Shown here piece after piece: positions 17,674 to 57,265 of a stretch of DNA of 64,000 nt. A program made the translations under genes and the position numbers. Source of the stretch: Ruditapes philippinarum (Eukaryota); the NCBI RefSeq assembly GCF_026571515.1, contig NW_026865446.1, positions 186,001 through 250,000 on the forward strand, written 5' to 3'. Under the pieces are notes generated by a model that worked only from the letters and a program-made list of their open reading frames with translations, was not told where the DNA came from and ran no database searches. Numbering within the stretch: the first letter of the stretch is position 1; every line of letters starts with the position of its first letter.

Positions 17674-17984
17674 TTATTGTACAATCTTAACTAATTGCAA
17701 AGCTATACATGTACCAATCAGTTCCAAACTAACACTGTATTTTTTAAATCCATTGCCATGTTGCTGATAAGTTTTTCCCGCACTATTTTCGGTCACGCAC
17801 ACGCATCTTGCCGCGTTTGACACTGTTTGACTCACCACTGATGGGTTTGTACTTATACGAACGCTAACTGCTCTGGCCGGTGTACGACTGGTCAATTGTG
17901 CACTCACAGGTGTCAAGGCACTAGGATAGGTGACTGGCGTGACACTTACTCCTCCACCTTCCCCCGAACGAGTTGGCTTGACTC
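17674..17984 (-). CDS. Terminal exon of an S/T/P-rich stalk + GPI-like-tail gene (paralogue of the 24366 gene); first exon not identified
   Basis: Phase-1 acceptor (cacaag|GA), then GVKPTRSGEGGGVSVTPVTYPS...AARCVCVTENSAGKTYQQHGNGFKKYSVSLELIGTCIALQLVKIVQ*. The motif CVC..NS.G...QQH.N is shared with the 24366 exon. Confidence 0.65.
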
Positions 17985-18656
17985 CTTGTGATTTAAAACA
18001 TGACATATTATTCAATTAAATCAATTAACTTCAGTAATTTGTTTGAAAGTATCCATACAATTTTATATTCAAGTAATTTTGCTTAACCTAGCAATAAAAA
18101 TATAAGTGTAGAAATATCTAGAAAAAGTGATCTCTCGGAAGCATGAAAAACAGCAAAATTACATGTAAATTGCAGACAACTCCAGTTTCAATTCCTGAAT
18201 CGAGTAACTACATTAGCATTAAACACTTTGTACATTATTTTCTTTTCTCTTTATTAAATCAGAGCCATCGCAAATTTCGTTTGTTTTTTTTTACTTTTTC
18301 TAAAAGTAATAGACTAATAGAAGATTAATAAAACGTTTGAACAAATATATAAAACAAATAAGGAAAGAAATTCCCTTTTTAAAATTTAACTAGGCAGGTC
18401 TAGTTACATTTATTGTACTGTCCAAATATGAATAATTTTCATTAAGTTAAATGGTCAGTTTTCAGCTGATATCAAAGTTCAATTTTACATCTAAAATTGT
18501 GCAAATCGTCCAAATGTCATAGCAGTACATCAAAGGACAAGATAGTAGGTTTCTTTATCAGATAATCTAGGTCAGCTGATATTAAAACTCAAAATAAGGT
18601 AATTTTTTAATGATTTTTTTTTGTGTAATAAATGGAGTTTAAATCCGTGTAAGTGT

Positions 18657-23191: not shown

Positions 23192-23959
23192 NNNNNNNNN
23201 NNNNNNNNNNNNNNNNNNNNNNNNNNNNNNNNNNNNNNNNNNNNNNNNNNNNNNNNNNNNNNNNNNNNNNNNNNNNNNNNNNNNNNNNNNNNNNNNNNNN
23301 NNNNNNNNNNNNNNNNNNNNNNNNNNNNNNNNNNNNNNNNNNNNNNNNNNNNNNNNNNNNNNNNNNNNNNNNNNNNNNNNNNNNNNNNNNNNNNNNNNNN
23401 NNNNNNNNNNNNNNNNNNNNNNNNNNNNNNNNNNNNNNNNNNNNNNNNNNNNNNNNNNNNNNNNNNNNNNNNNNNNNNNNNNNNNNNNNNNNNNNNNNNN
23501 NNNNNNNNNNNNNNNNNNNNNNNNNNNNNNNNNNNNNNNNNNNNNNNNNNNNNNNNNNNNNNNNNNNNNNNNNNNNNNNNNNNNNNNNNNNNNNNNNNNN
23601 NNNNNNNNNNNNNNNNNNNNNNNNNNNNNNNNNNNNNNNNNNNNNNNNNNNNNNNNNNNNNNNNNNNNNNNNNNNNNNNNNNNNNNNNNNNNNNNNNNNN
23701 NNNNNNNNNNNNNNNNNNNNNNNNNNNNNNNNNNNNNNNNNNNNNNNNNNNNNNNNNNNNNNNNNNNNNNNNNNNNNNNNNNNNNNNNNNNNNNNNNNNN
23801 NNNNNNNNNNNNNNNNNNNNNNNNNNNNNNNNNNNNNNNNNNNNNNNNNNNNNNNNNNNNNNNNNNNNNNNNNNNNNNNNNNNNNNNNNNNNNNNNNNNN
23901 NNNNNNNNNNNNNNNNNNNNNNNNNNNNNNNNNNNNNNNNNNNNNNNNNNNNNNNNNNN
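23192..23959. other. Assembly gap (N)
   Basis: N run. acatgtt occurs on both flanks, so the true gap may be small. Confidence 1.
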
Positions 23960-24365: not shown

Positions 24366-25804
24366 TTAGATGAACATGTTTGCACACTTCAATGTTAGGA
24401 CTGTAACTAACAGAGTGTAACTTGCGCTTATTCCCTGAACACTGTTATCATGTTGTTGATCAGATCTCCCTTGACTGTTTCCATTCTTACAAACACAATT
24501 TGTATTTGTTGAACCACTCGGAGACGTAGCGTATAAACTCTTCGGAAAAGCAGTTGACAATGCATCTCGTGGACTGGCCGTTGCCATCTCCCCTTTTGGA
24601 CCAGCAGTAGATGCCGCTGTTTTTGGACCAGCTGTTCTTTTATTTCGATTGTTGTGAATGGATCGGCACCTCCTGATTGACTTGGCAGCGCTCCTTTGGA
24701 GTGCATATATAAAACAAATATTATTATATAAACTTTTAAAAAGATGCAAGCGTTTTGTTTTGCTTGTACATTCGAGAGATACTTATCAATTCTTACATAA
24801 TATGAAGTATAAAATATATAAGTTTATTTTCACACATGCAGAGTTGTCCATTTTGTAAGTTTCGTGAAAAGAATACGTAATTCACATGAAGCGTAATTCT
24901 TAGTAAAGAAATGAGAAAATGGATTTCAATATCACCTAGAAAATATTTAACATACTGCTTTATTTATTTATTTATTTTACTTTGATAATTCTATAAAGAT
25001 TTACTGTAGTTGTGTTTAAGACAAACATTTTAGAGTGGTTTCATATATTTGTATGTCATCTGCTGAAAGTATTTAAAAATGCTATTTTTTTGGTGGTTTT
25101 TTTGTTGAGTGTCTGTCTTACAGTTTGTTATCTGACTTTTTTTTTTAAACAAAATATAAAATTGCAAAATTGCAAGCAACTTTGATTGTTTTCAAATAAT
25201 GATTGTATTGCTTAATGTCTTAGATGAACTCAGCTGAGGTCCCAAAGCCTAAGAACTAAACTTATCAATAATAATAATATAGAAAATCTTAAATTGATCA
25301 ACCAGGGTATTTAAAAGGAGAAAAAAAGATAATGACAAAATGTACGCCAGTTTTAATTGAAAATTTTAGTCTTATTTAAGCCAGATTTGAGTTTTTAATA
25401 TCAGATATGTTTGCACATTAAAAATAATTTTCTTGAAAACAGATATAACGAATGATCAGAACTTTTGCCAACAAGTTATTTTAATAGACCAACATCAAAT
25501 GGTATAAAAATGTATACAAATTTCAGAAAATATAGTCATATTATGTAAACCAAATCCTCATAGGAATCCATAAAATAATTTGTTTTTTAATTTGGTTTCA
25601 ATGTTAAACGTCTCCTAAAGTATAGCATGTCAATCTTAAAATGGTTTGTAATTGAAAATCAGGAAATTAAAATGTTTCTTTCCTTCTTTTACAACCACAT
25701 TGATATAAGAAAATTAAGAAGAAAGATTCAATGATAATTCTTTACTCACCAAACGCTAAAATGATGCCTACAATAATTAGCAAACGTACTACGTAGCTTT
25801 CCAT
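24366..25804 (-). pseudogene. Signal peptide + S/T/A-rich stalk + GPI-like-tail gene with an apparent 1-bp frameshift (null allele or sequence error)
   Basis: Exon 1 (25804-25750) reads MESYVVRLLIIVGIILAF-G. Exon 2 from 24693 reads GALPSQSGGADPFTTIEIK. The paralogue-matching frame (RTAGPKTAASTAGPK...CVCKNGNSQGRSDQQHDNSVQGISASYTLLVTVLTLKCANMFI*, stop 24366) needs one extra base near the A4 run at 24638-24641. Confidence 0.65.
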
Positions 25805-29520: not shown

Positions 29521-29649
29521 NNNNNNNNNNNNNNNNNNNNNNNNNNNNNNNNNNNNNNNNNNNNNNNNNNNNNNNNNNNNNNNNNNNNNNNNNNNNNNNN
29601 NNNNNNNNNNNNNNNNNNNNNNNNNNNNNNNNNNNNNNNNNNNNNNNNN
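29521..29649. other. Assembly gap (N)
   Basis: N run. Confidence 1.
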
Positions 29650-30891: not shown

Positions 30892-33840
30892 TTATATGGC
30901 AAACACTCTACATAGTTCCAGGATTGTACAAATAAACAGAAGAAAGTAGTTGACACAGATCTTTTGAAAACCGTTTCCAGATCCATTTGATTTCCCTGTA
31001 CCACTTCCGGTTCCAGATCCACTTGATTGCCCTGTACCACTTCCGGTTCCAGATCCACTATTTCCCGATTTGTGTCCGGTACCAGACGTAGAAGAATTTA
31101 TCCCGCTTGTAGTTCCTCCACCACCGCTTCCACCACCTCTTAAACCACTCCCATTTCCTCCAGCACCGCCTATCGCAACAGCACCGCCTCCTGAATGAAT
31201 TGGTGTCGTACCTGTAATAGAGATAAACACAATAATCACATAAAAATGCATTTGTTCATATTTGTGAACCAAATTGACTGGATAGAGAAGGAAAACAAAT
31301 GCGTACTTAACGTTCAACCCTCATGGAACAGATAATTAAGTCGATGACTCCAAATCATAGTCATTTCTCTGAAGAAATACTATAACATACCGTTTTATTC
31401 GCAATATGTAAATGCCAATTAGCATTGCTATTAAGAAATTAAAAGAGCCATAATATAGAGTTCATAAGTTTGGATATCTTTTTTGAAACACAAAATTGAC
31501 TCAGTTTTGGTCTTAAGACTGATCTCGGATTTAAGTCTTTGTATGATTAAAAATTGGTTTAACCTTATTGTTATTATAATTATCATATTATTGAATAAAA
31601 CAAGTTAGTCAGTCTCCTAAATAAGATCATGGGTATAAATGAGTATAAATTATATTACTTATATAAGACTAATTCATAATCAGAAACTATTCCAGATTGA
31701 AAACTTGCCGCCGGAAAATAGATTAAAATGATGGTACCAGCATATTTAACAAGTCACAATAGCGATAAGGTATACATAAAGCAGAATAAAACGATAGAAT
31801 GAACGATAAATTATAAACAATGACATAACAATATTCTGTAGTAAAGATAGTTCTCTAGATATCCATTTCAATAACACAAAATAGTGAAAGAAAAAAACAA
31901 TTTTAGAGCGCAAAGAACGTCTAAATTGTAAATGTTACAGACTCAGTTTTATTAAGCCTATACATGTGTGGCAAGGGAATGTGCAATATACCGTCAATGC
32001 CCACTGGGAGCACTGGCTTTCACTTGTTTCATCACTTGAACTTACTAGGACATCTGCAGCCGTATTGTATCTGAAAATCTGGACATATAGAATCCTTCGA
32101 GGTGTTGTATGGATTGCAGATGAGTCCGTTTGTGATGTCACATTTTGCGATATATTTGATGACGGAGTCATTCCTGAAGCCGGTAAAGGATTCGCCTTTT
32201 GAATCCTTGCACCTTGCAGCGGTTATTGGTCCATTTGCGCATACAGAATCAAGAACATTCGCTGACTGTTGCTCGTATTCGGATCTTAAGTAAAACAAAT
32301 ACATTTTGAATTGTATTGCAGGGAAAAGTAATTCATTATAATTTGTTGTACAATAACTTTCGTGATTTTCATGGAAAGATCAATCAACGAATTTAAGATC
32401 CGACGAAAAATTATCATTTACTCATATGATCATTTACAAAATATAATTACATTTTATTTGATTTTATTATTATTATTATTTATTTATTTTATTATAATTA
32501 TTATTTTGTTTTTGCAAAACAAACAACCCAAGAAAATGTCCTTTAAAAAGCCGCTAAAATTAATGCCAACTAAGAAAGTGAATACTTTTTAATCGTAATT
32601 AAAAGCTTTGTCTAAAATAGAATTGATATTTCGATTTCTATAACACTATCTCTCTTTACATCTCTAACATCGAGAAATATGTAAAATATGTACTGCAAAT
32701 ATTAATGACCAATATATGTTATCATTAAAATATATGCATTCATTTCTTATTGAAAAAAATTGACTAAGACTTTATAGAAAATAAATTTCTAATTACCTCC
32801 GTTTATTTACATGAAATGTTGAATTTGGTTATATATTTATAAATAATGCTTTTTGGAACTTACAATATTGATAAATCGTAATTTGATCATCATAAGAATG
32901 ATACAAAAATTGTGTTACAGGATCTTTAACTAATGCAAATATTTTTTTTAATTTTATTAACAAAAACGAGAATAATTTTGTAATCACATTCATGAATTGG
33001 CCTACTGAATGTAACATAAGTGGAAACATTATTTCATTTCCGGCCCATTGCATGTTTTTTTACAACGTGTATTTTACCTGTTTAACTTTGTTGGAGCCGA
33101 ACTGTTGAACCATTTAGTATCCCAGCATATTGTTGGAATCGTTGTCTGACCTAAATAAAACCAACATATAAACACTGATAATTGCTCGCAAATTTAACTG
33201 CAATGATCTGTAATGGAAGGTGTGTATGTAATACGATGAAAAATTACGCTGATAATATTTAGTATAAGACATAACAACAAGCAAAGAAATAATTTAACAT
33301 AGAAGTTGTTAGCAAGTGTGAGATATATGATCCGATATTACATTTATTTATGTAGCAGATACGTACATGTATAAAAGTGATCTCGAACAAAATAGTATTA
33401 TTCATCAGTTAAAAGATAATTCTAATTCACTTACAACTTTATAAACATTTTTCATTCAAGCAGCATTTTTATAAGAAATAGAAATGATACATTTCTATTT
33501 TTTCATTATTTTTTGAAATACTTATGGAAAATGTGCCCATTATAAATTAATCCACTTAAAATGATTTATTTTTGTTCTGCTTGAAATGGATGATTTTATA
33601 CAAGGTCCATTAAACTTCTATTGGATCTCTAATATAGCCTTAAATATTCATTTGGCAGTTATTTTAAGCTATGTTCAATGTTTACATAAATGTAAAAAGA
33701 CAAAACTTTCTTCACAAGCATCATTAACAAATCAGAAAGAAAAAGAACAATTTATGAAAATAAAGAAAAATAAAACATTTCTTACCGTATACTACAATGA
33801 AGCCTGCAAATGCTATTAGAAAAAACGCGCGACCACCCAT
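30892..33840 (-). CDS. Signal peptide - CysD/WxxW-like (Mucin2_WxxW) domain - Gly/Ser-rich stalk - GPI-like tail (228 aa, 4 exons)
   Basis: Exons 33840-33786, 33150-33078, 32284-32046 and 31211-30892 (phases 1,2,1) give MGGRAFFLIAFAGFIVVYGQTTIPTICWDTKWFNSSAPTKLNRSEYEQQSANVLDSVCANGPITAARCKDSKGE...AKCDITNGLICNPYNTSKDSICPDFQIQYGCRCPSTTPIHSGGG...GSGNGFQKICVNYFLLFICTILELCRVFAI*. Confidence 0.85.
32660..32930. mobile_element. Partial third copy of the AGATC/TTAA MITE
   Basis: Aligns with 4875-5124 and ends ttacaggatctttaa. Confidence 0.65.
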
Positions 33841-38600: not shown

Positions 38601-39053
38601 ATGCAAAAATAATCAATAGTCCAGGTAATCAGCGGAAATTTCTATAAATATGTATCACTGACATTCAATTTTTAAAAGGGGTGGAGTGATCGTCTTATAA
38701 GTAAGGAAGCTTTTCATTTTTTATTCTAAACATTTTTGATTATCAATTATGGGTCAGTTGTCCTTATAGTAACCAATCTCTTGAAATAATTATATTACAA
38801 ATTCAAGTCCACATGACATTTAGCTTAATATGTACTTTAAGTCTACTTTAATGTAGACCTATCATTTTATTCCAAACCTTTCACTTTGAATAAATATTTT
38901 GCCAGATTCATATTTCGATGTTGTTTTGATTGATTTTAAAGCTTACCCGAGTCTTATTAAATAAAGATTACCGAACCATTCATGGATTATCTTACCGTTT
39001 ACATAATAAGAACACAGAATCAAAGCAAAAAAACTAAAATATAACTCCATCAT
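35657..39053 (-). CDS. Signal peptide - CysD/WxxW-like domain - Thr/Ser-rich stalk - GPI-like tail (216 aa, 4 exons)
   Basis: Exons 39053-38996, 37265-37208, 36480-36227 and 35937-35657 (phases 1,2,1) give MMELYFSFFALILCSYYVNGRSVCWDSTIYNDSLTLTNGSNYEHQPASVLNKICTQGSLIAAKCMDAKKEE...TCSIVNGLICKPYENDPNATCPDYAIQYGCDCSTTQSGGAGVTPSNGLKTTPVVT...CRNSAQRFKNAGLLFIASTIVLRLVL*. Confidence 0.85.
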
Positions 39054-42986: not shown

Positions 42987-45900
42987 TCACGTGACTGTGT
43001 GAGTACAGGCTTGGGTACACCGTGCGGAAAAGTCGGAAGTGTGACAGAATGATGCGTTACAAAACATATCAAGTCCTCCATTGTTATTGAAATACTTGAA
43101 ATCTTTGTACAAAAATCTTGTTTCGTGGGTAGACTGTGAGATGATATGTGTGTTTCTGTCAACTTCGCATCTACAACAAAATAGAACTATTGGCTTATTA
43201 TAATAAGTTTACCTCTGTGAGTTCTCGATCTAAAACCAAGTAATTATAGAATGCATTTAATTAATAAAATGAGTTTACTTTGCATACGATAGAGGCCGAA
43301 AAAGGCCCCTTCCCATTAAATAAAAAACGTTGAATATTTTTTAATTATCTATATTTTTACCAATCAGCTGAAATATATATGAAGAAAGCACTATAAACAT
43401 TTTATTTTTTCCAGAATGAAAAAGGTGAATGTTTCAATACATTTTGTTAAATCTTCCAAGTGTTCTATTGCAATTTGTGATAAATTCCCCAATATTAAAA
43501 GCATTGGCTGTTCCGATAAAAAGTAAATAGAAAATCACTAAAAATAAAGTACATGTTTTACAAATTAATTTTAATCAACAACGGTTAGTAACGGGGAATC
43601 GATGAATCCCCTTACTTTCGTTATTATCAAATCTTTGAGAGTGAAGGATTACAAGTCAAACAAATTAAAGCATTTCTTTTCTTTTACATACCACTGCAAT
43701 TAAACATTTAGATTAAACCTATTTTGAAATGGTATCAATTTCAACTTTTTGCTTTTGGCGACCTTTGTGATTCTTATTTTATCTGGAACTGCCTAACTAA
43801 TTTTTTTATATTACAATTTTTCCTTACCCTTGCTTTATCAACGTGACATCCATAGCTGATGTGTTTGTTCCTGATGGCCTCGTGTAACACGTGTCTAGTA
43901 TCATTTTTGTATCCCAATCAGGCAATGTAGTGTATACTTTAACGAATACATTTTCTCCAAGTACCACCTTCAGGGGATTTCCGGATATACGGTGTAAAAA
44001 GTTAACGTCACTAAAATACGTCATAGATAATTGGTAGTAACTTGTAAACGAGGCATTATGTACTTCCGGAATATGTTCCACGTGCGATGACGTTACTTCA
44101 TTGGCATTGACGTCACATTCCACAATAAAAGTCCACTCGTGTTTCAAAACCACATATGGACGAATAGGATCAAATACAATGTAGAATAGGTTGTTTTTGT
44201 AAATATTCATGTCTGTATTAAACTGAAATAGAATTGTGTGTATAGTATAAAACTTGTAACAAGCTGTTTGACGGTATTTTGTTCAAATGTGAATTGGGTA
44301 CAAATGTGTAATGAAAAGAGTAAGAGATATCTACTTTTGATGTACAGAATAGTTATAATAAGTAAGATTAAAAAAAATACTTGGCTTCTTAACCCATTAC
44401 GTCATATACACGCCTTTTAACGCCTTTTTCACCCCCCCCCTTTTTTTGTTGTCTCAAATGATGAAAAAATGCCTTATTTAGGCCCCAAACACTTGTTTTT
44501 GTTTGAGAAATGTTGTTTAAAAAGTGACCTCTTTTTCGGCGTGGCCCCCCAACCAAAAGATACATCAGGGGGTTGCCAGAAGGGGGATGTGCCCCCTTCT
44601 GTTTGGGGGGTTTAAAGGGGGGCGGAGTCCCCCTCATCGCCAAGAAAATTTTAGACTTGACCCCAGATTGATCATAAGGTAACGTGTAACCAACGCTGAA
44701 AAGCATTTGACTCTATCTCAATCCATTTAGAAGTTGCAGCACTTTGAAATCAATTTTGATGGAAAAAAATCAACGCAAAATAGTGATTTTTGGCAATTTT
44801 GAGATGTCCCCTCGTTGCCATGGTAACAGAAAATTTAAGCCTGCGCATGTTGTTGCAAGGGCAATGGTCCAGTCAACATTTGTGCAAAGTTTGATTAGTG
44901 TTGAAGCAGTTTTTATAGTATTATAGCAATTTGAACTTGTAACGGGAGACTTTTTCAATGAAAACAGCCATTTTTCACAAAATGCTCATGAAGTAATGGG
45001 TTAATGAAAAAAAAATCTACAAAACAACAATTTTTCTTCAAATTTATATGACAGGCCATCTTTAAACATGAAAAAACGCGATTTAGGGTAATTTCAAGTA
45101 TTTTCATCATTTTCTGTTAAACAATTACGTCATACACACGCCTTTTAACGCCTTTTTCACCCCCCCCCCTTTTTGTTGTCTCAAATGATGGAAAAATGCC
45201 TTATTTAGGCCCCAAACACTTGTTTTTGTTTGAGAAATGTTGTTAAAAAAGTGACCTCTTTTTCGGCGCGGCCCCCCAACCGAAAGATACATCAGGGGGT
45301 TGCCAGAAGGGGGATGTGCCCCCCTTCTGTTTGGGGGGTTTAAAGGGGGGCAAAGTCCACCTCATCGCCAAGAAAATTTTGGACTTGTGAGAGGCTGTAA
45401 ATGACCCCAGATTAATCATAAGGTAACGTGTAACCAACGCTGAAAAGCATTTGACTCTATCTCAATCCATTGAGAAGTTACAGCACTTTGAAAACAATTT
45501 TGGTGGAAAAAATCAACGCAAAATAGTGATTTTTGGCAATTTTGAGATGTCCCCTCGTTGCCATGGTAACAGAAAATTTAAGCCTGAGCATGTTGTTGCA
45601 AGGGCAATGGTCCAGTCAACAATTGTGCCAAGTTTGATTAGTGTTGAGGCAGTTTTTATAGTATTATAGCAATTTGAACTTGTAACGGGTGACTTTTCAA
45701 TGAAAACAGCCATTTTTTCACAAAATGCTCATGAAGTAATGGGTTAAACGATATAAAAGTAATCAAAAATGTTGTAGTAGATTCTACACAAAAATGATTA
45801 CACTGTAGACTAGATGACTGTCTTGTGAGAATGCCGGACTTTTTGTTTAGGTTCTTACTTTTTCAGAGGTGGAACACGTGTTGAAGCTTTGTTGAAAAAG

Positions 45901-48900
45901 CAAAAAGGAGTTATCAAGATGCCCTTGACATTTGCCCGAGCCTAAAATAAGATCAGTTGGTCTGACTGTATGGTACATCATCTGCAGGAGACTCATGTTG
46001 ACAGATATATTCCAGTGCGATGCTGTACACTTGACCTCTATAGCATCTTCAAGTCGCAGATGACTTCCTGAAAAAAGATTATGATTCAAATGAAGCTCAG
46101 AAATGTCAGTGATGTTCATAATGTGTTTAATTGTTAAAATTCTTGTTTCAATGTAAAGACGATATATTACGCATTAATATAGTGTTTGTTGTATGACCGT
46201 TTTATAAATATTAATGAACTTATAGCTTATTTCAGGGTATTTCTGGTTCATTTCTAAATTGTTTGATAATAAGAGTATACGTTTAATAATATTATCATAT
46301 TTCTACAAAAATATATTTTAACACTATTATTGTTCATATTTAATTCCTTACTACAATGATTTTTGTAGACCATTTTGTATAATAAAATATTTCATACTTA
46401 GTAGAACTACATTGGCTAATTAAAAATACAAAATATTTCATACTTAGTAGAACTACATTGGCTAATTAAAAATACAAAANNNNNNNNNNNNNNNNNNNNN
46501 NNNNNNNNNNNNNNNNNNNNNNNNNNNNNNNNNNNNNNNNNNNNNNNNNNNNNNNNNNNNNNNNNNNNNNNNNNNNNNNNNNNNNNNNNNNNNNNNNNNN
46601 NNNNNNNNNNNNNNNNNNNNNNNNNNNNNNNNNNNNNNNNNNNNNNNNNNNNNNNNNNNNNNNNNNNNNNNNNNNNNNNNNNNNNNNNNNNNNNNNNNNN
46701 NNNNNNNTATATTAATGTTGTTGTTATTGTTGTTGTTGTTGTTTATTTGTTTGTTTATTTGTTTGTTTGCGATTTTTGGGCCAATTGGTTTCTTGTTGCT
46801 GCTGTTGTTATTTCTACTGTTTGTCTCAGATGAAGTATAGTTAGAATTTATAAATACGTTACACTGTTGCTGAAATTTGTTTGAAAACAACGATTTCAAA
46901 ACAATAGTTTTCAACTTACTCACGGTCGTTGTTTCTGGTGGACACTGGCAACCGTATTGTATAGCAAAGTCTGGACAAAATGCCGTCGGAGAATTTGGAT
47001 AGGGTTGACATATAAGCCCGTTTACATGATTGCACACTGCTGTATATTGAACAACTGAATTGTTCTGTATACCACTGATGGGCTCCCACTTTTCATCCCT
47101 GCACTGTGCCGCAATTACTTGACCGTTAGGACAAATCTTATTTAAGACACTTACTGATTGATGTTCATAATTTGATCTGAAAATAAAGTTAACATTCTCT
47201 TAATTTTTAGTACTAGACCGTGTTCAGTCAATGAAATGAATTAGGTAAAGAAAAAAATCATGATGTTGCGGATGTGAGATTCATTTGATTGCACTATTAT
47301 TCTTATAAAAAGGCAATGTTAACAAGCAAAACATATATTTCAATCAACTGTGGTTTGGATTATTTTTCAAATTTCTGAATTCGTTTCTAACAATATTTTG
47401 TAAGTTGTGAAATTTTATTCCTGTTAATGGTCTTTTATGTTTTACTCGAGGTTAAAACTATTCTATTAATGAACAAAACAAATATTATGGAAAGTGAAAA
47501 AAAATGTTCTCATGAATTAATTCATATGTAGTTATTCTCCAAAAAAGAAGAGCTTTCAGATTACGGTGTTTCTCCTGTATATACTTCAACGTCATAAGAA
47601 TAAAAATATATCAATTTATTTTAAAGATGAATATTTTTATCAATAAATATATAAGTACAACATGAATATATATATTTTCTTGACTTGAATCAATCAATGT
47701 AATATTTTATACTAAGAGGATATTTTTTCGTTTTATCATATTTCACGAAAAACGAAAAAATAACCCGTATATTTAATTTCATTATCAAAGAAAAATGGTT
47801 ATGAACTCCCTTGCCTGCTACGCAACTGCAATTATACAGCGCGCAGAAATATAAGTATCGTCTTGTTTTGCACGCGATATTTAGCGCTAGATTGTGACGT
47901 CACGTAAACAAATTTTTAAACGTCTGTACAGCGTTAATGTCTGATTTAAAGATATTGGTGTTCGGATTTATTTTCTTAGTTAGACCATTTTCTATCATTC
48001 TACATAGTTTTCAAAACAAAATTCAACAAAAAGTTGTTTGTATTTATCAGATTTTTAAAACAAAATGGCCAAAGAAGTCCCTTAAAATAAATATGAGTTT
48101 TGACTCCGCCCACTTTCATATTTATATTTCATATTTATTTTTAAAAAATATGAAATACATTTGACTGATATAGCACCATATTTCATAGGTAAAATTAAAT
48201 AAATTAACTTATTTCTGATGAACATATATTTATCACTGAGTGCAGTACGACTTGAAGAGCACCGAATACTTCCTTTGATCAGCAAAAACAAAAGAAATAA
48301 TTCATAAACGGTTTAAGTTTTTAAATGGAAGCCCTTTTTGTCACTTATATTTATAATAACTTGGGTTATATTGATGTAGCAAAGCGTCAGGTAAGTTTGT
48401 TCGAGTTGGCTTAAACATAGAAAAAAATATTTCCTTACATATTTACTCGGTTATCTTTAAAATATCGAAACTGTTGTTTTTTTAAAGACTTGACAATAAT
48501 TATTTTATCGCAGAATAATGCTACAATGTCATTATGCAATGTACACAAAAGATAAGTACCGACCCGTTTCTCAATCCAACAGATTCGTTGAACCATGTTG
48601 AGTCCCAGCAAATTTTCTGACCTAAAATAAAGAATAGCAACGAGAATTAAAGCAATTTCGAGCACGCTTTATTTACTTTTAAATGTTAAAGACGGCACCA
48701 AAAGTACTGTAGTACAAAGCCGAAGAAATAAGTAAAGTTTTGACGCAAACTTAAAAAAATATATATATATCTAACTCTAAGCCCATTTACCTTTCTGCTT
48801 GTCTCTGCGAGTTAATACTAAAAATTTGATGATTCCAAAATCCGCTTTTGGATTCTGGTTTCAACTGACTTGTTCAACATATCAATTAATGATAAAAAAC

Positions 48901-49591
48901 AAACATTCATACCAATGCTAAATGTGTTGCAACAGTTTTATGTTCAGGTATACAAAACTGTATGATAAATGCCAATTATGAAAGAAAAACGGTTACTCAA
49001 AACCTTGATGTTTTATTGATTATAATTTTAACATTATTTTTATTTATTATAATTTTAACATTATAACATAAATTACAATCTCAGATTACTATGTAAGGTA
49101 TAATTATTGTAATATTGATTGCGAGGCCATTTAACCTCTCGATATAACGTCTTACAATGCCTCTTTACTTTAAATACCACTATATCTTTATTGTCATTCA
49201 CATGTAACTATTTCTTTGTTATTTTTAAGAGTATTTATAATGTAAAAAAAAAACCAATTTTAAATGGACTTTGCAAAAACCGCCCGAATGGCATATATCC
49301 GAGCGAACATATTATCCTAAGGATAACAGGGTAATATATGTGTCTTAATTTCAATTAATCCTCAAATCAAATATATATCTATTTTTTAAAGTTACTATGA
49401 CACCTAAGTTTAAAAATCACTTAGCTGTGCAAGGATTTTACGGATATGAATACATAGTTTTAACGTTGTACATGTGACAACTTGTTGTTAACGTTAAAAA
49501 ATTAGCTTATGGTAGACTATAGTCATCTCTTACCATTTACATCAACAATAAATAATAATCCAAATATAAATAATAAATTATTTACTTCCAT
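42987..49591 (-). CDS. Secreted CysD/WxxW-like + zona pellucida (ZP) module protein, copy A (386 aa, 6 exons)
   Basis: Exons 49591-49534, 48621-48564, 47176-46920, 46067-45859, 44222-43828 and 43170-42987 (phases 1,2,1,0,2) splice without stops. Order: signal peptide; CWDSTWFN...NGLIC...CPDFAIQYGCQC; ZP-N (IEVKCTASHWNISV...CQG...FNTCST...IYKNNL...FIVEC); ZP-C (V.LGENVFVKV...MILDTCYTRP...LIKQGCEVD...TRF...FCNASFCHTSDFSARCTQACTHTVT*). Confidence 0.9.
44393..45743. mobile_element. piggyBac-type (CCC..GGG, TTAA) non-autonomous element present as a head-to-tail dimer in intron 4 of ZP copy A
   Basis: ttaa|cccattacgtcat ... atgaagtaatggg|ttaa. Two near-identical units of about 610-620 bp (44393-45000, 45121-45743). 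The paralogous intron at about 52755-52775 is an empty site. Confidence 0.8.
46480..46707. other. Assembly gap (N) in intron 3 of ZP copy A
   Basis: N run, preceded by an exact tandem duplication of about 46 bp. Confidence 1.
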
Positions 49592-51357: not shown

Positions 51358-54300
51358 TCACGATACTGTGTGTTTACAGGCTTGGGTACACCGTGCGGAA
51401 AAGTCGGAAGTGTGACAGAATGTTGCGTTACAGAATATGTCAAGTCCTCCATTGTTGTTGAAATACTTGAAATCTTTGTACACAAATCTTGTCTCGTGGG
51501 TAGACTGTGAGATGATATGTGTGTTTCTGTCAACTTCGCATCTAGAACAAAATAGAGCTATGGGTTATTATAAAGTAAGTTTACCTAGTGAGATCTTGAT
51601 CTAAAACCAAGTAATAATAGAGTGCATTTAATGAATAAAGTGAGTTTCTTTTGTAAAAGATTGAGGCCGAAAAAGGCCCTTTCCCATTAAAAAAACGTTG
51701 AATATTTTTTAATTATTTTTACTTTTACTAATCAGCTGAAATATATATGAAAAAAAGCACTAAAAACATTTTATTATTTCCAGAATGAAAAGGTGAATGT
51801 TTCAATAAATTTTGTTAAATCTTCAAAGTATTCTATTAGAATTTGTGATAATTTCCCCAATATTAAAAGCATTGGCTGTTCCGATAAAAAGTAAATAAAA
51901 AATCACTAAAACAACGTACATGTTTTACAAATTAATTTTAATCAACAACGGTTAGTAACGGGGAATCGATGAATCTCCTTACTTTCGTTATTATCAAATC
52001 TTTGAGAGTGAAGGAGTACAAGTCAAACAAATTAAAGTATTTCTTTTCTTTTACATACCACTGCAATTAAACATTTAGATTAAACCTATTCTGAAATGGT
52101 ATCAATTTCAACGTTTTGCTTTTGGCGACCTTTGTGATTCTTATTTTATCTGGAACTGCCTAACTAATTTTTTTATATTACAATTTTTCCTTACCCTTGC
52201 TTTATCAACGTGACATCCATAGCTGATGTGTTTGTTCCTGATGGCCTCGTGTAACACGTGTCTAGTATCATTTTTGTATCCCAATCAGGCAATGTAGTGT
52301 ATACTTTAACGAATACATTTTCTCCAAGTACCACCTTCAGGGGATTTCCGGATATACGGTGTAAAAAGTTAACGTCATTATAATACGTCATAGTTAATCG
52401 GTAGTGACTTGTAAACGAGGCATTATGTACTTCCGTAATATGTTCCACGTGCGATGACGTTACTTCATTGGCATTGACGTCACATTCTACATTAAAAGTC
52501 CACTCGTGTTTCAGAACCACATATGGACGAACAGGGTCGAAAACAATGTAGAATAGGTTGTTTTTGTAAATATTCATGTCCGTATTAAACTGAAATAGAA
52601 TTGTAGGTATAAAGAAAACCGTTTTGTTACAAAACTTGTTATTCGCTATTTGTTAACTTTTTTACCAAATGTGAAAAGGGTAAATAAAAAAAGTGTGAGA
52701 GATCTACTTTGTTGTACAAAATATTTATAATGAGATATATTCTCATAAAATTCATTGCTTCTCAAATGATATAAATATAATCAAATAAGTTGTAGCAGAT
52801 TCTACATTAACGTGATAACACTGTTAACAATGGAAGGTGATTATGGAGTGAGAATGCTGAACTTTCCGTTGATGTGCTTACTTTTTCAGAGGTGGAACAG
52901 GTGTTGAAGCTTTGTTGAAAAAGCAAAATGGAGTTATCAAGATGACCTTGACATTTCTCCGAGCCTAAAAATATATCGGTTGGTTTGACTGAATGGTACT
53001 TCATCTGCAAGCGACTCATGTTGACAGATATATTCCAGTGTGATGCTGTACACTTGACCTCTATAGCATCTTCAAGAAGAAGATGACTTCCTGCAAAAAG
53101 ATTATGATTCAAATTAGGCTCAGATATGTCTGTGGTATTCATAATGTCTTAAATTATTAAAATTCTTGTTTCAATGTAAAAAGGATATATAAAGCATAAA
53201 TATAGCGTTTTTTGTATGAACTTTTAATGAATATTTATTAACTTATAGCTTACTTTAGGGTTTTTCTGATTCATCCCTCCAAAATGTATCTAAATTGTTT
53301 GAAAATAAGAGTATGTTTCAGAATATTAATATATTTCTACACAAGAAAAATATGTTATATTTGAAAATGCTTCTTGGTCATGTTAAATAACGTTTTACAA
53401 TAATTCTTGTAGTCAATTTTGATAAATAATATCACTCACATTGGCTTAAAGAAATACACAGTCATAAACAATCATTAGATTTTTATTTTATTTATTCATT
53501 TTAATTATTCATCTATATATTATTATTGTTATTTTAATTGTTGTTTATTTATTTGTTTGTTTGGGTTGTTGTTGTTGCCTCTGATATTTCTACTATTTGT
53601 CTCAGATGAAATACAGTAAGAACTCATTAACACGTTACTCTGTTTCTGAAAAAAATGTGAAAAAACAACGATTTCAGGACTAAATTACAACTTACCGACG
53701 GTCGATGTTATTGGTGGACACCGGCAACCGTATCTAATAGCATAGTCTAGACAAGTTGCGTACGGAATATGTGGATATGGATGACAGATAAGTCCGTTTA
53801 TATGATCACAAACAACATAAATATGATTATTTGTATCATTGAAATTGACATTAAAAGGCTCTCCCTTAATATCCTTACACTGTGCAGCTATTACTGATCC
53901 TTGAGTGCAAATCTTATCTAATACACTTACTGGTTGATGTTCATAATTTGATCTGAAAAGAAAGGTTTGGTATTTACAATCTGTTGTTCATCCAAAGTAA
54001 TTAAATCAACAACAAAGAAAACAAATGATGATGCGGCAGTGATATTATGTATTCTTATAAATGTGAAAAGTCACAAAGACAAACGTATATTTCAATTGAT
54101 TACTTCTGTAAATTTCTGAACTCGTTTCTAGCATCATTTTGTAAGCAGTGGAGATATTCTGTTGTTATTTGTGTCCTTTTAAACGAGCTTAAAAGTTTAA
54201 AACATTTAAAATGCATGACATTTTTGAAAAATGTTTGTTTAAATCCGTGCACTTTTCATTTATTTATTTATTTTTATGTTGCTTTTCAAATATGTATATA

Positions 54301-57265
54301 CAGATATATAAAAAAAAATTATAACGTGAACGGGCTAGCTGTTTTATACATATTTTTTCTTATGGCTACTTTGCCAGTTGATTTGTTACAAATGATTAAA
54401 ATGATTTAATCAAGTTTAATTAACTAGTGTTTGTAACAGTAACGTTAAATTTGATAAGTTCTTATTGAACTTGATATAAAATTAAGGTGTCACTTCTTAG
54501 GCTATTTAATATATATATTATATATATCAACCACATGGATATCAAGTTTTCAATACTTTAGTATTTACAATTACACTCAACGCAATGTTAAATTGATGCA
54601 ATTGATATACTTCGTAAATAGTGTGAGATTCCAAGTAATTTATCTAACATATTTATTATTTCTGTGATATTGAGACTGCAGAAGCTGGGCAGAGACTGAC
54701 TGTCCTTTGAGTTTTTGCGTGTATTCATACTCGCCACCAGTTGCCCATATGGGCGAGTCCTCCATAAGAATATTAGTCATTTTAGATTTTGGAGGATAGT
54801 GCAATCACAAATAAAGAAAGACGCCCCAATTCAAGAAGCATTTCCCGGTTCTTTAGCATGCTAAGTGTTTAAGCACCCGTACATGGGACCTCGATTCAAA
54901 TTCTCGTCCGTAAGACTGAATAGTAATTTTAGTTTGCCAGCCCGGGAATCGAACCCACAATGTCGGGATTACAAGTCTCGCGCTCTAACCGATTGACCTA
55001 TGCGGGCTGGTTCTGTCCACAGCTTTGAGCTCTATTTATACCTAATAATGTAGTTATATTTAATAATCGTTTTCTGAATTTGAGGAAATCAAGCATCCAA
55101 CAGGTACTGATATTGGGTCGAATATTGGTTAGGATGGTATTGAGTTCGAATGATTTTAAGGACAAATTTTTATATTTTATATCAAATAATAAAAATTTGT
55201 CAGTTTTATCAAATAATTGTTATGAATACATTTTCTAATCTAATACATTATTATTTATATATTTTTTTATTTATCTATAAAACATTCAACTATCCATTTA
55301 AATACAAGATTAAGTATATGTTTACAATAATAACTAACCGGTAATTTAGGTTTAAAACCACTACATATCATAATAGAATCATTATAGAATCTAGGCAGAA
55401 GAGAACAATCGTAACACAAGCAATGTAAGATTTTAATGGAATCCCTTTTTTGTCTTATGATATATTTATTATCACAAAGGTTATAGTGATGAAGCAAAGC
55501 GTCATGTAAGTTGTACAATTTGGCTTAAACATAGAAACAGTTATTTTTCTATATATTCCTCGGTCACCATTCAAAGGGCTGAACATCTTTTAATAGACTT
55601 GACAATTATATCTAAATATAGTAGTTATACATTGTCAATGTGTAATGTAGACACATGATAGGTACCTACCCATTTCTCAATGTAACAGATTCGTTGTACC
55701 ATTTTGAGTCCCAACAAATTTTCTGACCTAAAATAAAAAGAGGATTTAAACAAATTTCAGTTTGATTAATGAACTTAAGTCAACGTGTTAAATTTCCTCT
55801 TATCCTTGAATACCAGTTTACCTAAATTTTCATTCACATGAAAAGATCTTTTTCGAACTGACTAGTCTGACTTGCATGTCGGATCGTAAAGCACTGAAAT
55901 GGAACCAAAAGGCGTACTTGTGAGACAGTTAAATAAATGAGAGTTGTAAAATATAAATTGTGTTGTCAGAGCGCAAAAATGTTGCTGCCTAATTGTGAAT
56001 ATGTTAAGCCGACACAAGGAGATATTTTTCTTCTCCTTGACTTGATATTTTTTTCACTGTGGGAAATTTCCCTTATATAACTAGGTGTCATAGACACTTT
56101 GATCTACAAAGGAGATTTTTGCTACTCCATAATATTGTCACTGTGGGGAGATTCCCCTAAAATAACTGGGTTTCACAGAGTCACAGTCACTTGATAATCA
56201 TGTTATAAGATTACCTTAGTCATTCTGTGGATGCTGCTATTCAAGCAAAGGCAAAGAGTAATAATAATGTAAAAGAAAAACAAACAATTTCAAATACACA
56301 AAGTAATGCTGGACAAATTTCCAGTTTGCCTTTACAAAAAAAGGCCAAATGGCATATATCCGTAATCCTATGTGTCACAGAGTGAGAAAAATGTGCAGCC
56401 TGACCGGGACTCGAACCCGGGACCCTCGGAATACCGTACCGCGGCTCTACCGACTGAGCTATCCGGCCGCTTACACATCTTCTCCCCTTAATAGTGAACA
56501 GTTCTGAACCATTACATACACCCCTGCTATATTGAAATTCGTCCTCGAATTTCACAGAGTTACAGAGCAATTTAAATAAAACTTTGAGCTATATCAGTCA
56601 CGGCCCCCGTTAGGCGCCAAATGTCACAGGGTGAGAAAAATGTGCAGCCTGACCGGGACTCGAACCCGGGACCCTCGGAATACCGTCCCGCCGCTCTACC
56701 GACTGAGCTTTCCGGCCACTTACACATTTTCTCCCGTAATAAGTGAACAGTTCTGAACCGTGATCGAAATTCAAAAATGAAGTGAATGAGGCCCGTCAAC
56801 GTGTTACAGGTCAAATGAAGTTATTAGTATGAAGTTGAATAATGATATGAATGATTGAAAAAGAGACGATAGGGGAATGATATAGAGTATGGGTATGAAT
56901 TACAGAGTATCCTAACAAAGACAAAATGACCCTGTGACATATGGATTAAGGTGTCATAGTCACTTTGAAAATAAATGACAACATTTTTGGATTAATTAAA
57001 ATTAAGACGGATATATTGGCCCTGTTGGCCATTGGATTACGGATATATGCCATTTGGCCGTTTTTTTTTTTGTAAAGGCAAATTGATTTGCTATGCAAAG
57101 ATTTTCCGGGTGTGATATTAGTGGACATAACTCTAAAGTTTTGCATGTGCGAAAACCTGTTAATGGCATTAAAAAGTAGCTAATCGTATTTTTCTACAGT
57201 CATTTCTTACCATGTACACCAGTGAATAATAATCCAAATATTAATAAGAAATAACTAAATTCCAT
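51358..57265 (-). CDS. Secreted CysD/WxxW-like + ZP module protein, copy B (385 aa, 6 exons)
   Basis: Exons 57265-57211, 55727-55670, 53952-53696, 53090-52882, 52589-52195 and 51541-51358 have the same phases as copy A, and exons 2-6 have the same lengths. MEFSYFLLIFGLLFTGVHGQKICWDSKWYNESV...ARCTQACKHTVS*. Confidence 0.9.
54650..55010 (-). mobile_element. tRNA-derived SINE (family 3, possibly Deu-domain type) in intron 2 of ZP copy B
   Basis: Minus-strand head with A box TAGGTCAATCGG and B box GGTTCGATTCC. The gggacctcgattcaaattctcgtccgtaagac block resembles the Deu central domain. The 3' boundary is approximate. Confidence 0.65.
56396..56468 (-). pseudogene. tRNA-Lys-like sequence inside the 3' LTR (not a canonical tRNA gene)
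   Basis: GGCCGGATAGCTCAGTCGGTAGAGC...GGGTCCCGGGTTCGAGTCCCGGTCAGGCTG. D and T arms are perfect, the anticodon and acceptor stems have mismatches, and U33 is absent. Confidence 0.75.
56645..56717 (-). pseudogene. tRNA-Lys-like sequence inside the 5' LTR (not a canonical tRNA gene)
   Basis: Three substitutions relative to 56396-56468. The B box is intact and the A box has T8>A. Confidence 0.75.

What the first reader, a model, noticed from the sequence alone, without database searches (positions are those of the whole stretch)
17674..57265. Modular cell-surface gene array: one CysD domain carried on either GPI-type stalks or anchorless ZP modules (candidate two-component mucosal coat system)
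Seen in sequence: six same-strand tandem genes. Five have a 55-58 bp phase-1 signal exon. Four share a two-exon 8-Cys CysD/WxxW-like domain with an identical phase-2 intron. That domain is followed through a phase-1 intron by either a low-complexity stalk with a hydrophobic tail (two genes) or a ZP module with no anchor (two genes). Two further genes have only the stalk exon. The stalk exons look homologous (GxxPxxSGG-like start; GNGF[K/Q]K or NS[A/V]Q before the tail). Established: CysD domains of gel-forming mucins (MUC2/MUC5) self-associate, ZP modules polymerise into filaments, and phase-1/phase-1 modules shuffle readily. Inference: GPI-anchored CysD stalks could tether secreted CysD-ZP polymers to the epithelium in trans, replacing the anchor the ZP proteins lack. 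I know of no description of this arrangement but cannot search for one.
Basis: partly seen in the sequence, partly recalled or inferred. Interest (0 to 1): 0.8.

Follow-up and report, generated by a model that had tools for sequence, protein, structure and literature searches.

The report
Clam surface-protein gene array, shuffled modules
A Manila clam gene cluster puts one mucin-type "CysD" head either on short sugar-rich stalks with a lipid-anchor signal or on anchor-less zona-pellucida matrix modules; the cluster is real and partly transcribed, but the idea that the two kinds dock to each other is untested.

Summary
The window is Ruditapes philippinarum. On the minus strand, 17674-57265, lie six tandem genes built from modules with matching intron phases. 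B to F each start with a 55-58 nt phase-1 signal exon. C, D, E and F share a two-exon, 8-Cys CysD-like domain with the same phase-2 intron. A phase-1 intron then leads to a low-complexity stalk with a hydrophobic C-terminal tail (C, D) or to a ZP module that stops five residues after its last Cys (E, F). A and B are stalk-only.

NCBI's model LOC132729068 is gene D exactly. RNA contigs from two studies show all five splice junctions of gene F. The head passes Pfam's Mucin2_WxxW threshold, and its AlphaFold model matches only mucin CysD structures (Z 5.7-6.4).

Caveats:
- B has a 1-nt frameshift in this assembly.
- A has no 5' exon that I could find.
- The motif is WxxxW, not WxxW.
- Diverged copies of the array sit on three other contigs.

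No assembly gap touches an exon. Anchor-less ends recur in this molluscan ZP subfamily (21 of 35 relatives), and tandem module swapping has a bivalve precedent (EGFZP/EGFL). Trans-tethering of ZP polymers by GPI-CysD proteins remains speculation. I rate it a new variant of a known kind, of moderate interest.

The parts
57211..57265 (-). Gene F exon 1: signal peptide exon (55 nt, phase 1), MEFSYFLLIFGLLFTGVH(G)
   Evidence: RNA contigs X1/X2 join it to exon 2, with an allelic 17-nt difference at the joint.
55670..55727 (-). Gene F exon 2: first part of the CysD-like head (QKICWDSKWYNESVTLRN), phase 1 in and phase 2 out
   Evidence: RNA joint 53952/55670 in X1 and X2.
53696..53952 (-). Gene F exon 3: second part of the CysD-like head (7 Cys), phase 2 in and phase 1 out
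   Evidence: Pfam Mucin2_WxxW 26.6 bits, E 1e-5. RNA joints on both sides.
52882..53090 (-). Gene F exon 4: ZP-N (Cys 1-3)
   Evidence: Pfam ZP-N E 3.3e-4. RNA joints 53090/53696 and 52589/52882.
52195..52589 (-). Gene F exon 5: end of ZP-N (Cys 4), linker and first half of ZP-C
   Evidence: Pfam ZP-C 33.5 bits. 95 relatives by HMMER. RNA joints.
51358..51541 (-). Gene F exon 6: end of ZP-C (5 Cys), ...CTQACKHTVS, stop TGA at 51360-51358. No furin site, hydrophobic patch or anchor.
   Evidence: RNA joint 51541/52195. No conserved hydrophobic ORF downstream.
49534..49591 (-). Gene E exon 1: signal exon (58 nt, phase 1)
48564..48621 (-). Gene E exon 2: CysD-like part 1 (QKICWDSTWFNESVGLRN); weak donor GTCGGT
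46920..47176 (-). Gene E exon 3: CysD-like part 2; 60% aa identity to F
46480..46707 (.). Assembly gap inside E intron 3, not in an exon
   Evidence: The flanking exons are both phase 1. The flanks are colinear in L001.
45859..46067 (-). Gene E exon 4: ZP-N
   Evidence: Pfam ZP-N E 7.4e-4.
43828..44222 (-). Gene E exon 5: ZP-N end, linker and ZP-C start; 94% aa identity to F
   Evidence: Pfam ZP-C 31.7 bits.
42987..43170 (-). Gene E exon 6: ZP-C end ...CTQACTHTVT, with the stop at the same place as in F
38996..39053 (-). Gene D exon 1: signal exon (58 nt, phase 1)
   Evidence: P0001 = NCBI LOC132729068.
37208..37265 (-). Gene D exon 2: CysD-like part 1 (RSVCWDSTIYNDSLTLTN)
36227..36480 (-). 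Gene D exon 3: CysD-like part 2
   Evidence: Whole protein scores Pfam Mucin2_WxxW 24.1 bits against a cut-off of 22.4. AF2 model against PDB CysD structures gives Z 5.7-6.4.
35657..35937 (-). Gene D exon 4: Ser/Thr-rich stalk plus ...RCRNSAQRFKNAG-LLFIASTIVLRLVL* (GPI-type tail)
   Evidence: The spliced Logan contig P0002 spans the CysD/stalk joint.
33786..33840 (-). Gene C exon 1: signal exon (55 nt, phase 1)
33078..33150 (-). Gene C exon 2: CysD-like part 1 (QTTIPTICWDTKWFNSSAPTKLN)
32046..32284 (-). Gene C exon 3: CysD-like part 2
   Evidence: Pfam Mucin2_WxxW 19.6 bits, E 1.5e-3.
30892..31211 (-). Gene C exon 4: Gly/Ser-rich stalk plus ...GNGFQKICVN-YFLLFICTILELCRVFAI*
29521..29649 (.). 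Assembly gap, intergenic between C and B
   Evidence: The flanks are colinear in L003.
25750..25804 (-). Gene B exon 1: signal exon (55 nt, phase 1)
   Evidence: Conserved in L003.
24366..24693 (-). Gene B stalk exon. The start GALPSQSGG is in one frame and the tail ...NSVQGISASYTLLVTVLTLKCANMFI* in another. A 1-nt shift sits in an A-run near 24638-24641.
23192..23959 (.). Assembly gap between B's 3' end and A; it could hide A's 5' exon
17674..17984 (-). Gene A stalk exon: GVKPTRSGEGGG...CVCVTENSAGKTYQQHGNGFKKY-SVSLELIGTCIALQLVKIVQ*. No 5' exon was identified.
   Evidence: Relatives P0099-P0101 keep the CVCVT..NSAGKT..QQHGNGFQKY motif and the tail.

Best explanation
This is a venerid-clam multigene family of small secreted or surface glycoproteins, made by tandem duplication and exon shuffling across introns of matching phase.

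Shown:
- Three architectures sit side by side: signal peptide + stalk (A, B); signal peptide + CysD-like head + stalk (C, D); and signal peptide + CysD-like head + type-II ZP module whose frame stops right after the last conserved Cys (E, F).
- One gene of each CysD architecture is spliced as predicted.
- The CysD exon and the ZP exons of E and F have different histories (dS about 0.6 against 0.08-0.17). This means either the ZP part was homogenised by gene conversion or the heads were exchanged.

Inferred:
- The stalk exons end in GPI-attachment signals: a small-residue triplet, then about 7 polar residues, then 14-18 hydrophobic residues to the C-terminus. C and D would then be membrane-tethered mini-mucins that display a CysD head.
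- E and F would be released into the extracellular matrix without the cleavage step that normally activates ZP polymerisation.

The most likely working model is components of an apical extracellular coat (mucus, mantle or egg surface). The shared CysD head supplies one non-covalent binding specificity, and the C-terminal module decides whether that head sits on the membrane or in a ZP-type matrix. Whether the two classes bind each other is unknown.
For: - Exon models and phases.
- D is identical to NCBI LOC132729068.
- The spliced Logan contig P0002 crosses the CysD/stalk joint.
- All five F junctions appear in RNA contigs of two studies.
- Pfam Mucin2_WxxW is above its cut-off for D (24.1 bits) and for the F exon (26.6 bits).
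- The AF2 model's six best PDB matches are all MUC2, MUC5AC or MUC5B CysD, at Z 5.7-6.4 over 84-97 residues; the next match has Z 3.9.
- Pfam ZP-C is above its cut-off.
- The ZP relatives are molluscan proteins with many different N-terminal modules: SRCR, CUB, EGF, Sushi, Ig and MAM.
- 21 of 35 relatives with a complete ZP-C end stop within 15 residues of the last Cys, and 8 carry a TM-like stretch in the tail (5 of those 8 also a furin-like site).
- There is no conserved hydrophobic ORF downstream of E or F.
- Kyte-Doolittle hydrophobicity of the last 16 residues is 1.4-2.4 for the stalk tails, against -0.2 to -0.4 for the ZP ends.
- The motif ARxxRC[RK]N[SN]A plus a tail is kept in diverged copies on C6629 and C2592.
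- The dN/dS and dS mosaic.
- Precedent: tandem EGFZP/EGFL genes in bivalves, in which the TM region was lost (PMC9290575).
- CysD forms non-covalent dimers in MUC2 (PMC3195396).
Against: - I could run no GPI or signal-peptide predictor and no experiment.
- The 3' end of F is not covered by RNA beyond 51375, so a further exon is not formally excluded.
- B is frameshifted in this assembly, A has no start, and E has a weak donor. Part of the array may therefore be decaying.
- The head has 8 Cys rather than 10 and no literal WxxW. The C exon scores below the Pfam cut-off and the E exon gives no hit.
- Tissue and co-expression are unknown.
- Canonical ZP polymerisation needs a cleavable external hydrophobic patch, which is absent here.
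Confidence: 0.7

Rival explanations
1. One reading: GPI-anchored CysD-stalk proteins (C, D) capture secreted CysD-ZP polymers (E, F) by CysD-CysD binding, and so replace the anchor that the ZP proteins lack.
For: - The same head sits on both classes in one array.
- MUC2 CysD forms non-covalent dimers (PMC3195396).
- E and F have no anchor.
Against: - There are no binding or co-expression data.
- Anchor-less ends occur in 21 of 35 relatives that carry quite different N-terminal modules. None of the 95 relatives has this head. The missing anchor therefore does not depend on a CysD partner.
- The heads of the stalk and ZP genes are only 47-56% identical.
- Without an external hydrophobic patch, canonical polymerisation is doubtful.
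Confidence: 0.08
2. The shared head is only a by-product of local exon shuffling. The stalk genes and the ZP genes work independently, for example ZP genes in mantle or shell matrix or the egg coat, and stalk genes in gill or gut epithelium.
For: - The ZP module of this subfamily is combined freely with many heads.
- Bivalve EGFZP and EGFL paralogues in one tandem array are expressed in different mantle zones (PMC9290575).
- The CysD and ZP exons have different histories.
Against: - All intact copies keep their reading frames, and dN/dS is below 1 in the head (0.2-0.6). The head is therefore under constraint in both classes.
- Physical clustering on one strand is compatible with shared regulation.
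Confidence: 0.3
3. E and F are conventional anchored ZP proteins whose last exon (furin site, hydrophobic patch, TM or GPI signal) was missed.
For: - The RNA contig of X1 stops at 51375, 15 nt before the stop codon.
- A GT lies at 51366-51365.
- Some relatives do have KRRS plus a TM.
Against: - The stop is at the same place in E, F and both C321 copies.
- 51375 is where the paralogues fork, which explains why the contig ends there.
- No hydrophobic ORF conserved between E and F lies downstream.
- Many relatives from other species end at the same point, several with a shared ...P-x-[LIV]-[IV]-G terminus.
Confidence: 0.12
4. Part of the array is pseudogenised, and only D, F and perhaps C are functional.
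For: - B has a frameshift.
- A has no 5' exon.
- E has a GTCGGT donor.
- A CysD copy with stop codons lies on C411.
- No NCBI protein was retrieved for A or B.
Against: - B's shift is one base in an A-run. It is absent from two other copies, so it may be an assembly error or a null allele.
- All E exons are open.
- A's tail motif is kept at 42% identity in P0101.
Confidence: 0.3

Closest known systems
CysD domain of gel-forming mucins (Pfam Mucin2_WxxW, PF13330; MUC2, MUC5AC, MUC5B; also CILP and oikosin 1)
   Same: - About 100-residue disulfide-rich domain.
- Pfam score above the cut-off for D and F.
- The predicted fold matches solved CysD structures best.
- The conserved core ...NGLIC.PY....C.DYAI.YGC.C is present.
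- It sits next to Ser/Thr-rich sequence in C and D.
   Different: - 8 Cys instead of the ten of MUC2 CysD (PMC3195396).
- WxxxW or a single W instead of WxxW.
- A single copy at the N-terminus of a 216-386 aa protein with no VWD/C8/TIL domains.
- The same genome has a canonical multi-CysD mucin elsewhere, on contig C7822.
Molluscan EGFZP/EGFL shell-matrix genes (Shimizu et al. 2022, PMC9290575)
   Same: - Tandem paralogues that share signal and head exons but differ at the C-terminus.
- They evolved by duplication and domain shuffling, with loss of the membrane anchor in some copies.
- The ZP module belongs to the same broad molluscan group; relative P0012 is an EGF-ZP protein of this clam.
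   Different: - The head is CysD-like, not EGF.
- The non-ZP partners here carry a stalk with a GPI-type tail rather than a degenerate ZP-like region.
- No proteomic or expression link to shell is known for these genes.
Uromodulin/GP2-type ZP proteins
   Same: A type-II ZP module with 10 conserved Cys (4 in ZP-N, 6 in ZP-C), preceded by unrelated N-terminal domains.
   Different: Uromodulin has a furin-type cleavage site, an external hydrophobic patch and a GPI anchor after the last Cys (established knowledge). E and F stop five residues after it.
C. elegans LET-653 (secreted ZP protein of the apical matrix)
   Same: A ZP protein without a membrane anchor that acts in an apical extracellular matrix. 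The lack of an anchor is from my own knowledge; the review PMC13361971 lists LET-653 as an apical-ECM ZP protein.
   Different: The N-terminal domains differ (PAN/Apple). There is no close sequence relation, and no partner family with the same head.
Small GPI-anchored mucin-like surface proteins (e.g. CD24, CD52; own knowledge)
   Same: A signal peptide, a short Ser/Thr/Gly-rich segment and a C-terminal GPI signal. This is the plan of A and B, and of the C-terminal half of C and D.
   Different: There is no sequence relation, and C and D add a folded CysD head.

Membership tests
Mucin CysD (Pfam Mucin2_WxxW, PF13330) | Profile score at or above Pfam's gathering cut-off (22.4 bits) | tested here: met
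   D (P0001) scores 24.1 bits and the F exon 26.6 bits. The C exon scores 19.6 bits and the E exon gives no hit, but both are 47-60% identical to D and F.
Mucin CysD (Pfam Mucin2_WxxW, PF13330) | WxxW motif near the N-terminus of the domain | tested here: not met
   The sequences are CWDSKW (F), CWDSTW (E), CWDTKW (C) and CWDSTI (D). That is W-x3-W or a single W.
Mucin CysD (Pfam Mucin2_WxxW, PF13330) | Ten cysteines forming five intradomain disulfides (MUC2 CysD, PMC3195396) | tested here: not met
   Eight Cys: one in exon 2 and seven in exon 3. The small N-terminal C-x3-C loop is missing.
Mucin CysD (Pfam Mucin2_WxxW, PF13330) | CysD three-dimensional fold | tested here: met
   The AF2 model of P0001 has pLDDT 65-84 over roughly residues 41-120. 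Its six best PDB chains are all CysD (8ov0, 8ck2, 6tm2, 7a5o, 8oer, 6tm6), at Z 5.7-6.4 and rmsd 3.1-3.9 over 84-97 residues. The next chain has Z 3.9. Strength is moderate.
Gel-forming mucin | VWD-C8-TIL assemblies and long PTS regions | tested here: not met
   The proteins are 216-386 aa, and Pfam finds only WxxW or ZP.
ZP module | ZP-C profile above its cut-off, and ZP-N with four conserved Cys | tested here: met
   ZP-C scores 33.5 and 31.7 bits against a cut-off of 24.6. ZP-N scores 21.4 and 20.2 bits on an exon that holds only three of its four Cys. The full pattern of 4 + 6 Cys is seen in the sequence.
Canonical polymerising ZP precursor | Consensus furin cleavage site, external hydrophobic patch, and a TM or GPI anchor after the last Cys | tested here: not met
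   The frame stops 5 residues after the last Cys in E, F and the C321 copies. There is no conserved hydrophobic ORF downstream. The 3' end is not confirmed by RNA.
GPI-anchored protein | N-terminal signal peptide, plus a C-terminal signal of small omega/omega+2 residues, a polar spacer of about 7 residues and a hydrophobic tail of 14-18 residues running to the C-terminus | tested here: met
   - D: N-S-A / QRFKNAG / LLFIASTIVLRLVL.
- C: G-N-G / FQKICVN / YFLLFICTILELCRVFAI.
- A: G-N-G / FKKYSVS / LELIGTCIALQLVKIVQ.
- B (other alleles): D-N-S / VQGISAS / YTLLVTVLTLKCANMFI.
. These are sequence features only.
GPI-anchored protein | Predictor call (NetGPI, PredGPI) or PI-PLC release | not testable with these tools
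   No such predictor or assay was available.

The most novel reading that the evidence does not exclude
The array encodes a self-contained two-part surface coat. ZP subunits are made without the inhibitory hydrophobic patch or an anchor, and they are positioned, and perhaps licensed to assemble, by docking of their CysD head onto GPI-anchored CysD mini-mucins encoded next door. That would be a trans-acting substitute for the cis anchor-and-cleavage control of all characterised ZP polymers.
Probability: 0.07. Interest if true: 0.75.

Novelty: new variant of a known kind. Interest (0 to 1): 0.4.

Why it matters
- The array is a clean, transcript-supported example of exon shuffling in action. One folded head is exchanged between a membrane-tether module and a matrix module inside a single 40-kb array, and the head and ZP exons have separate histories.
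- It adds a CysD-like head to the list of modules fused to molluscan ZP domains. None of the 95 ZP relatives found carries this head.
- It shows CysD outside giant mucins, in proteins small enough to express and crystallise.
- It gives a tractable pair of genes (D and F) for asking how ZP modules that lack the external hydrophobic patch and anchor are secreted and assembled. That feature turns out to be common in this molluscan subfamily, and as far as I could find it has not been discussed.

Tried and rejected
- The protein Atlas could not read the new exon sequences. For P0001 it gave only a weak structural neighbour, 'WxxW domain-containing protein'.
- A sequence search of the PDB with P0001 found nothing.
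- Literature searches for WxxW together with zona pellucida found no description of the fusion.
- The word-based protein search cannot reach the ~386-aa ZP proteins from single exons. NCBI models for E and F were therefore not retrieved, and none was found for A or B.
- I looked for a hidden anchor exon downstream of E and F and found no conserved hydrophobic ORF.
- I looked for A's signal exon. There were only poor candidates (19109-19040 and 19954-19912), and none matched the 55-58 nt pattern.
- Positive selection does not explain the divergent CysD exon. dN/dS is 0.2-0.6, and the exon is simply older (dS 0.6) than the ZP exons.
Exons were searched one by one, and the natural database protein P0001 stood in for the full-length D.
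- I neither read nor filled the letters equivalent to the three gaps in other copies.
- Read laying allowed one call, which I spent on gene F. The stalk genes therefore have no read-level test here.

Full report
**Source and layout**

The window is AT-rich (about 30% GC) and has three N runs. A protein search with one exon returned NCBI 'uncharacterized protein LOC132729068 [Ruditapes philippinarum]' at 100% identity. The window is therefore Manila clam DNA, contig C13933:186001-250000 of its assembly. All features of the finding lie on the minus strand.

**Checking the observation**

Pfam placed Mucin2_WxxW on 32035-32379 and 36111-36488. It placed ZP-N on 45850-46173 and 52810-53148, and ZP-C on 43827-44282 and 52194-52652. 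An all-against-all BLASTP of minus-strand open segments found the short first CysD exon in four genes. It also showed that E and F are a recent tandem duplication in which introns are similar too.

Reading the sequence and bookkeeping the phases gives these models, each with canonical AG/GT boundaries:
- F has six exons, 57265-51358, and encodes 385 aa.
- E has six exons, 49591-42987, and encodes 386 aa.
- D has four exons, 39053-35657, and encodes 216 aa.
- C has four exons, 33840-30892, and encodes 228 aa.
- B has two exons, 25804-25750 and 24693-24366.
- A has one recognisable exon, 17984-17674.

The phase pattern is 1, 2, 1 for the signal exon, CysD part 1 and CysD part 2 in all four CysD genes. 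After that comes either the stalk exon or ZP exons with phases 0 and 2.

**Independent support for the splicing**

NCBI's 216-aa protein P0001 maps exon for exon onto D. A Logan contig protein, P0002, is 79-86% identical to D and runs across the CysD/stalk junction without the 290-nt intron, so it comes from spliced RNA.

For F, I laid two RNA contig sets and two raw RNA runs on 51290-57285. Contigs of X1 and X2, which belong to different studies, carry joints at 51541/52195, 52589/52882, 53090/53696, 53952/55670 and 55728/~57211. The first four have GT..AG ends on the minus strand. One 964-nt contig of X2 links the signal exon, both CysD exons, ZP-N and the middle ZP exon. The two raw RNA runs had almost no reads on the exons.

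The last exon is covered only to 51375, 15 nt before the stop codon. That position is where the E and F sequences fork, which explains a contig end. It does leave the 3' end unproven.

- Gene B is not in one frame in this assembly. From the signal exon it reads GALPSQSGGADPFTTIEIKEQ... and ends ...TVFRE*.
- The JGI protein P0098 aligns to B in two pieces that overlap at 24638-24641, an A-run. The copy on contig C6629 is in frame throughout. The window's B therefore has a one-base indel, which is either an assembly error or a null allele.
- Gene A has no convincing 5' exon within 5 kb. The gap 23192-23959 lies upstream of it.
- E's first CysD donor is GTCGGT.

**The assembly gaps**

No gap lies in an exon.
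- 46480-46707 is inside E's intron 3. Both flanking exons are phase 1, and the flanks are colinear in the C321 copy. F's equivalent 605-nt intron is removed in RNA.
- 29521-29649 is intergenic between C and B, with colinear flanks in the C6629 copy.
- 23192-23959 is between B and A.
- I did not read the letters that correspond to the gaps in other copies.

**What the head is**

- Full-length D scores 24.1 bits on Mucin2_WxxW against a cut-off of 22.4, and F's second exon alone scores 26.6. The C exon scores 19.6 bits, and the E exon gives no hit.
- An AlphaFold2 model of P0001, built with a nine-row alignment of family members, has pLDDT 65-84 over the head.
- Foldseek's top five chains out of 350,542 are MUC2 and MUC5AC CysD, with MUC5B CysD (8oer) ranked 11th; all have weak E-values.
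- On re-alignment the six CysD entries stand at Z 5.7-6.4 and cover 84-97 of their 90-110 residues. The next hit has Z 3.9.
- The head departs from human CysD. It has eight rather than ten Cys (PMC3195396), and WxxxW or a single W instead of WxxW.
- The genome also holds a canonical multi-CysD mucin on C7822, and single-exon genes with a literal WxxW.

I therefore call the head CysD-like: same fold family, but a divergent subtype.

**What the ZP part is**

A full HMMER search with F's 131-aa middle ZP exon found only 95 relatives at E <= 1e-3. The named ones come from Mercenaria, Ruditapes and Argopecten. They are annotated DMBT1-like, CUZD1, OIT3-like and crumbs- or jagged-like.

Their N-terminal modules are very varied: SRCR, CUB, EGF, Sushi, Ig, MAM and ephrin-binding domains. 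An HMM of the clam head finds it in none of them.

Of the 35 relatives with a complete ZP-C end, 21 stop within 15 residues of the last Cys. Several of these share a ...P-x-[LIV]-[IV]-G terminus. Eight carry a TM-like stretch in tails of about 90 residues, and five of these also have a furin-like site. The anchor-less end of E and F is thus a recurrent state of this subfamily and not special to this locus.

Downstream of E and F there is no hydrophobic ORF conserved between the two.

**The stalks**

- The stalk bodies are 26-37% Ser+Thr, and C is 40% Gly.
- The last 16 residues have Kyte-Doolittle means of 1.4-2.4, against -0.2 to -0.4 for the ZP ends.
- Each tail is preceded by about seven polar residues and a small-residue triplet (G-N-G, N-S-A or D-N-S). 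This is the layout of a GPI signal.
- The motif ARxxRC[RK]N[SN]A plus a tail is kept in diverged D-like copies on C6629 and C2592.
- CVCVT.N.AGKT.QQHGNGFQKY plus a tail is kept in a 42%-identical relative of A.
- No predictor was available, so GPI anchoring is an inference.

**Family size and history**

The head's second exon has further copies in the assembly:
- C321 carries a third CysD-ZP gene with a second ZP-C end behind it.
- C6629 carries a colinear copy of the D-like, C-like and B-like genes, 81-93% identical at the DNA level.
- C2592 carries a CysD plus a D-type stalk.
- C411 carries a copy with stop codons.
 Some of these contigs may be divergent haplotypes.

Between E and F, dS is 0.60 in the CysD exon but 0.08-0.17 in the ZP exons. 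dN/dS is 0.2-0.6 throughout. The head and the ZP part therefore have different histories, through gene conversion of the ZP part or exchange of heads. The head's divergence reflects age, not detectable positive selection.

**Interpretation**

Shown: a transcribed tandem family whose members combine a signal exon, an optional CysD-like head, and either a stalk with a hydrophobic end or an anchor-less ZP module.

Inferred:
- GPI anchoring of A to D.
- Secretion of E and F into a matrix.
- A common binding role for the head. MUC2 CysD forms non-covalent dimers (PMC3195396).

It is weakened because anchor-less ZP ends occur with many other heads. The nearest published parallel is the bivalve EGFZP/EGFL array. 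There, tandem paralogues share head exons, some lost the transmembrane region, and they are expressed in different mantle zones (PMC9290575). CysD domains in lophotrochozoan mucin-like proteins are known (PMC4948705). I found no description of a CysD-ZP or a CysD-GPI-stalk protein.

**Limits**

- Only one stretch could be laid with reads.

**Verdict**

This is a new variant of a known kind, of moderate interest.

Noticed in passing
window 5242-6830 (+): Two Cys-rich exons that look like a Ly6/uPAR three-finger protein (Pfam QVR, E 0.003). They end in ...CHCTSNLCNG plus a hydrophobic tail (VSKILVPSASFIFAVIMLGLKVF). This may be another GPI-type surface gene beside the array.
   Followed up: partly
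window 14938-15678 (+): Two Cys-rich exons on the opposite strand. The second gives a weak hit to the uromodulin-like D8C domain (PF23283, E 0.003). D8C is the domain that precedes the ZP module in uromodulin.
   Followed up: partly
window 56290-56890 and 54890-55089: Repeat elements in F's first and second introns are very deeply covered in all RNA runs, with many loose ends. They are transcribed from many genomic copies, not as part of gene F. The first overlaps the tRNA-like mini-LTR noted in s1-792595.
   Followed up: no
window 44392-45728 (-): A tandemly duplicated insert of about 740 bp lies in E's intron 4 and is absent from F. It has open segments such as GGPRRKRGHF.NNISQTKTSVWGLNKAFFHHLRQQK and no Pfam hit. 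Contig C2592 carries a related copy (78-82% nucleotide identity).
   Followed up: partly
window 24638-24641: A one-base frame change in an A-run of gene B, relative to the JGI protein P0098 and the C6629 copy. It is either an assembly error or a null allele.
   Followed up: yes
L001 (C321:38001-48000), L002/L003 (C6629:1-20000), L004 (C2592:58501-68500): Diverged further copies of the array: a third CysD-ZP gene, a colinear D-like/C-like/B-like block at 81-93% nucleotide identity, and a lone CysD + D-type stalk gene. They could be haplotigs or true paralogous arrays.
   Followed up: partly
G000:C7822:64000-115200 (+): At least 20 canonical CysD (Mucin2_WxxW) matches lie within about 50 kb, some inside ORFs of 500-840 aa. 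This is presumably the clam's gel-forming mucin and a possible ligand for the small CysD proteins.
   Followed up: no
L006/L007 (C5412), L005 (C14784), L008 (C13007): Other small WxxW-domain genes with a literal WxxW (CGQWSPWKNENHP; RMWTGWYNTDDP). The domain is in a single exon on C5412 and C14784 and in two exons on C13007.
   Followed up: no
window 57285 and upstream: The 964-nt X2 RNA contig for gene F continues about 250 nt past 57285. F's 5' UTR is therefore longer than the window stretch that I laid, or it includes a further 5' exon.
   Followed up: no
proteins P0006, P0007, P0012, P0025, P0061, P0072, P0075, P0102, P0103: Anchor-less relatives of the ZP module share a C-terminal ...P-x-[LIV]-[IV]-G ending right after the last Cys. 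This looks like a conserved terminus of unknown meaning.
   Followed up: no
window 10401-10773: A (CA)n / CATA-type microsatellite block that reads open in several frames. It is not coding.
   Followed up: no
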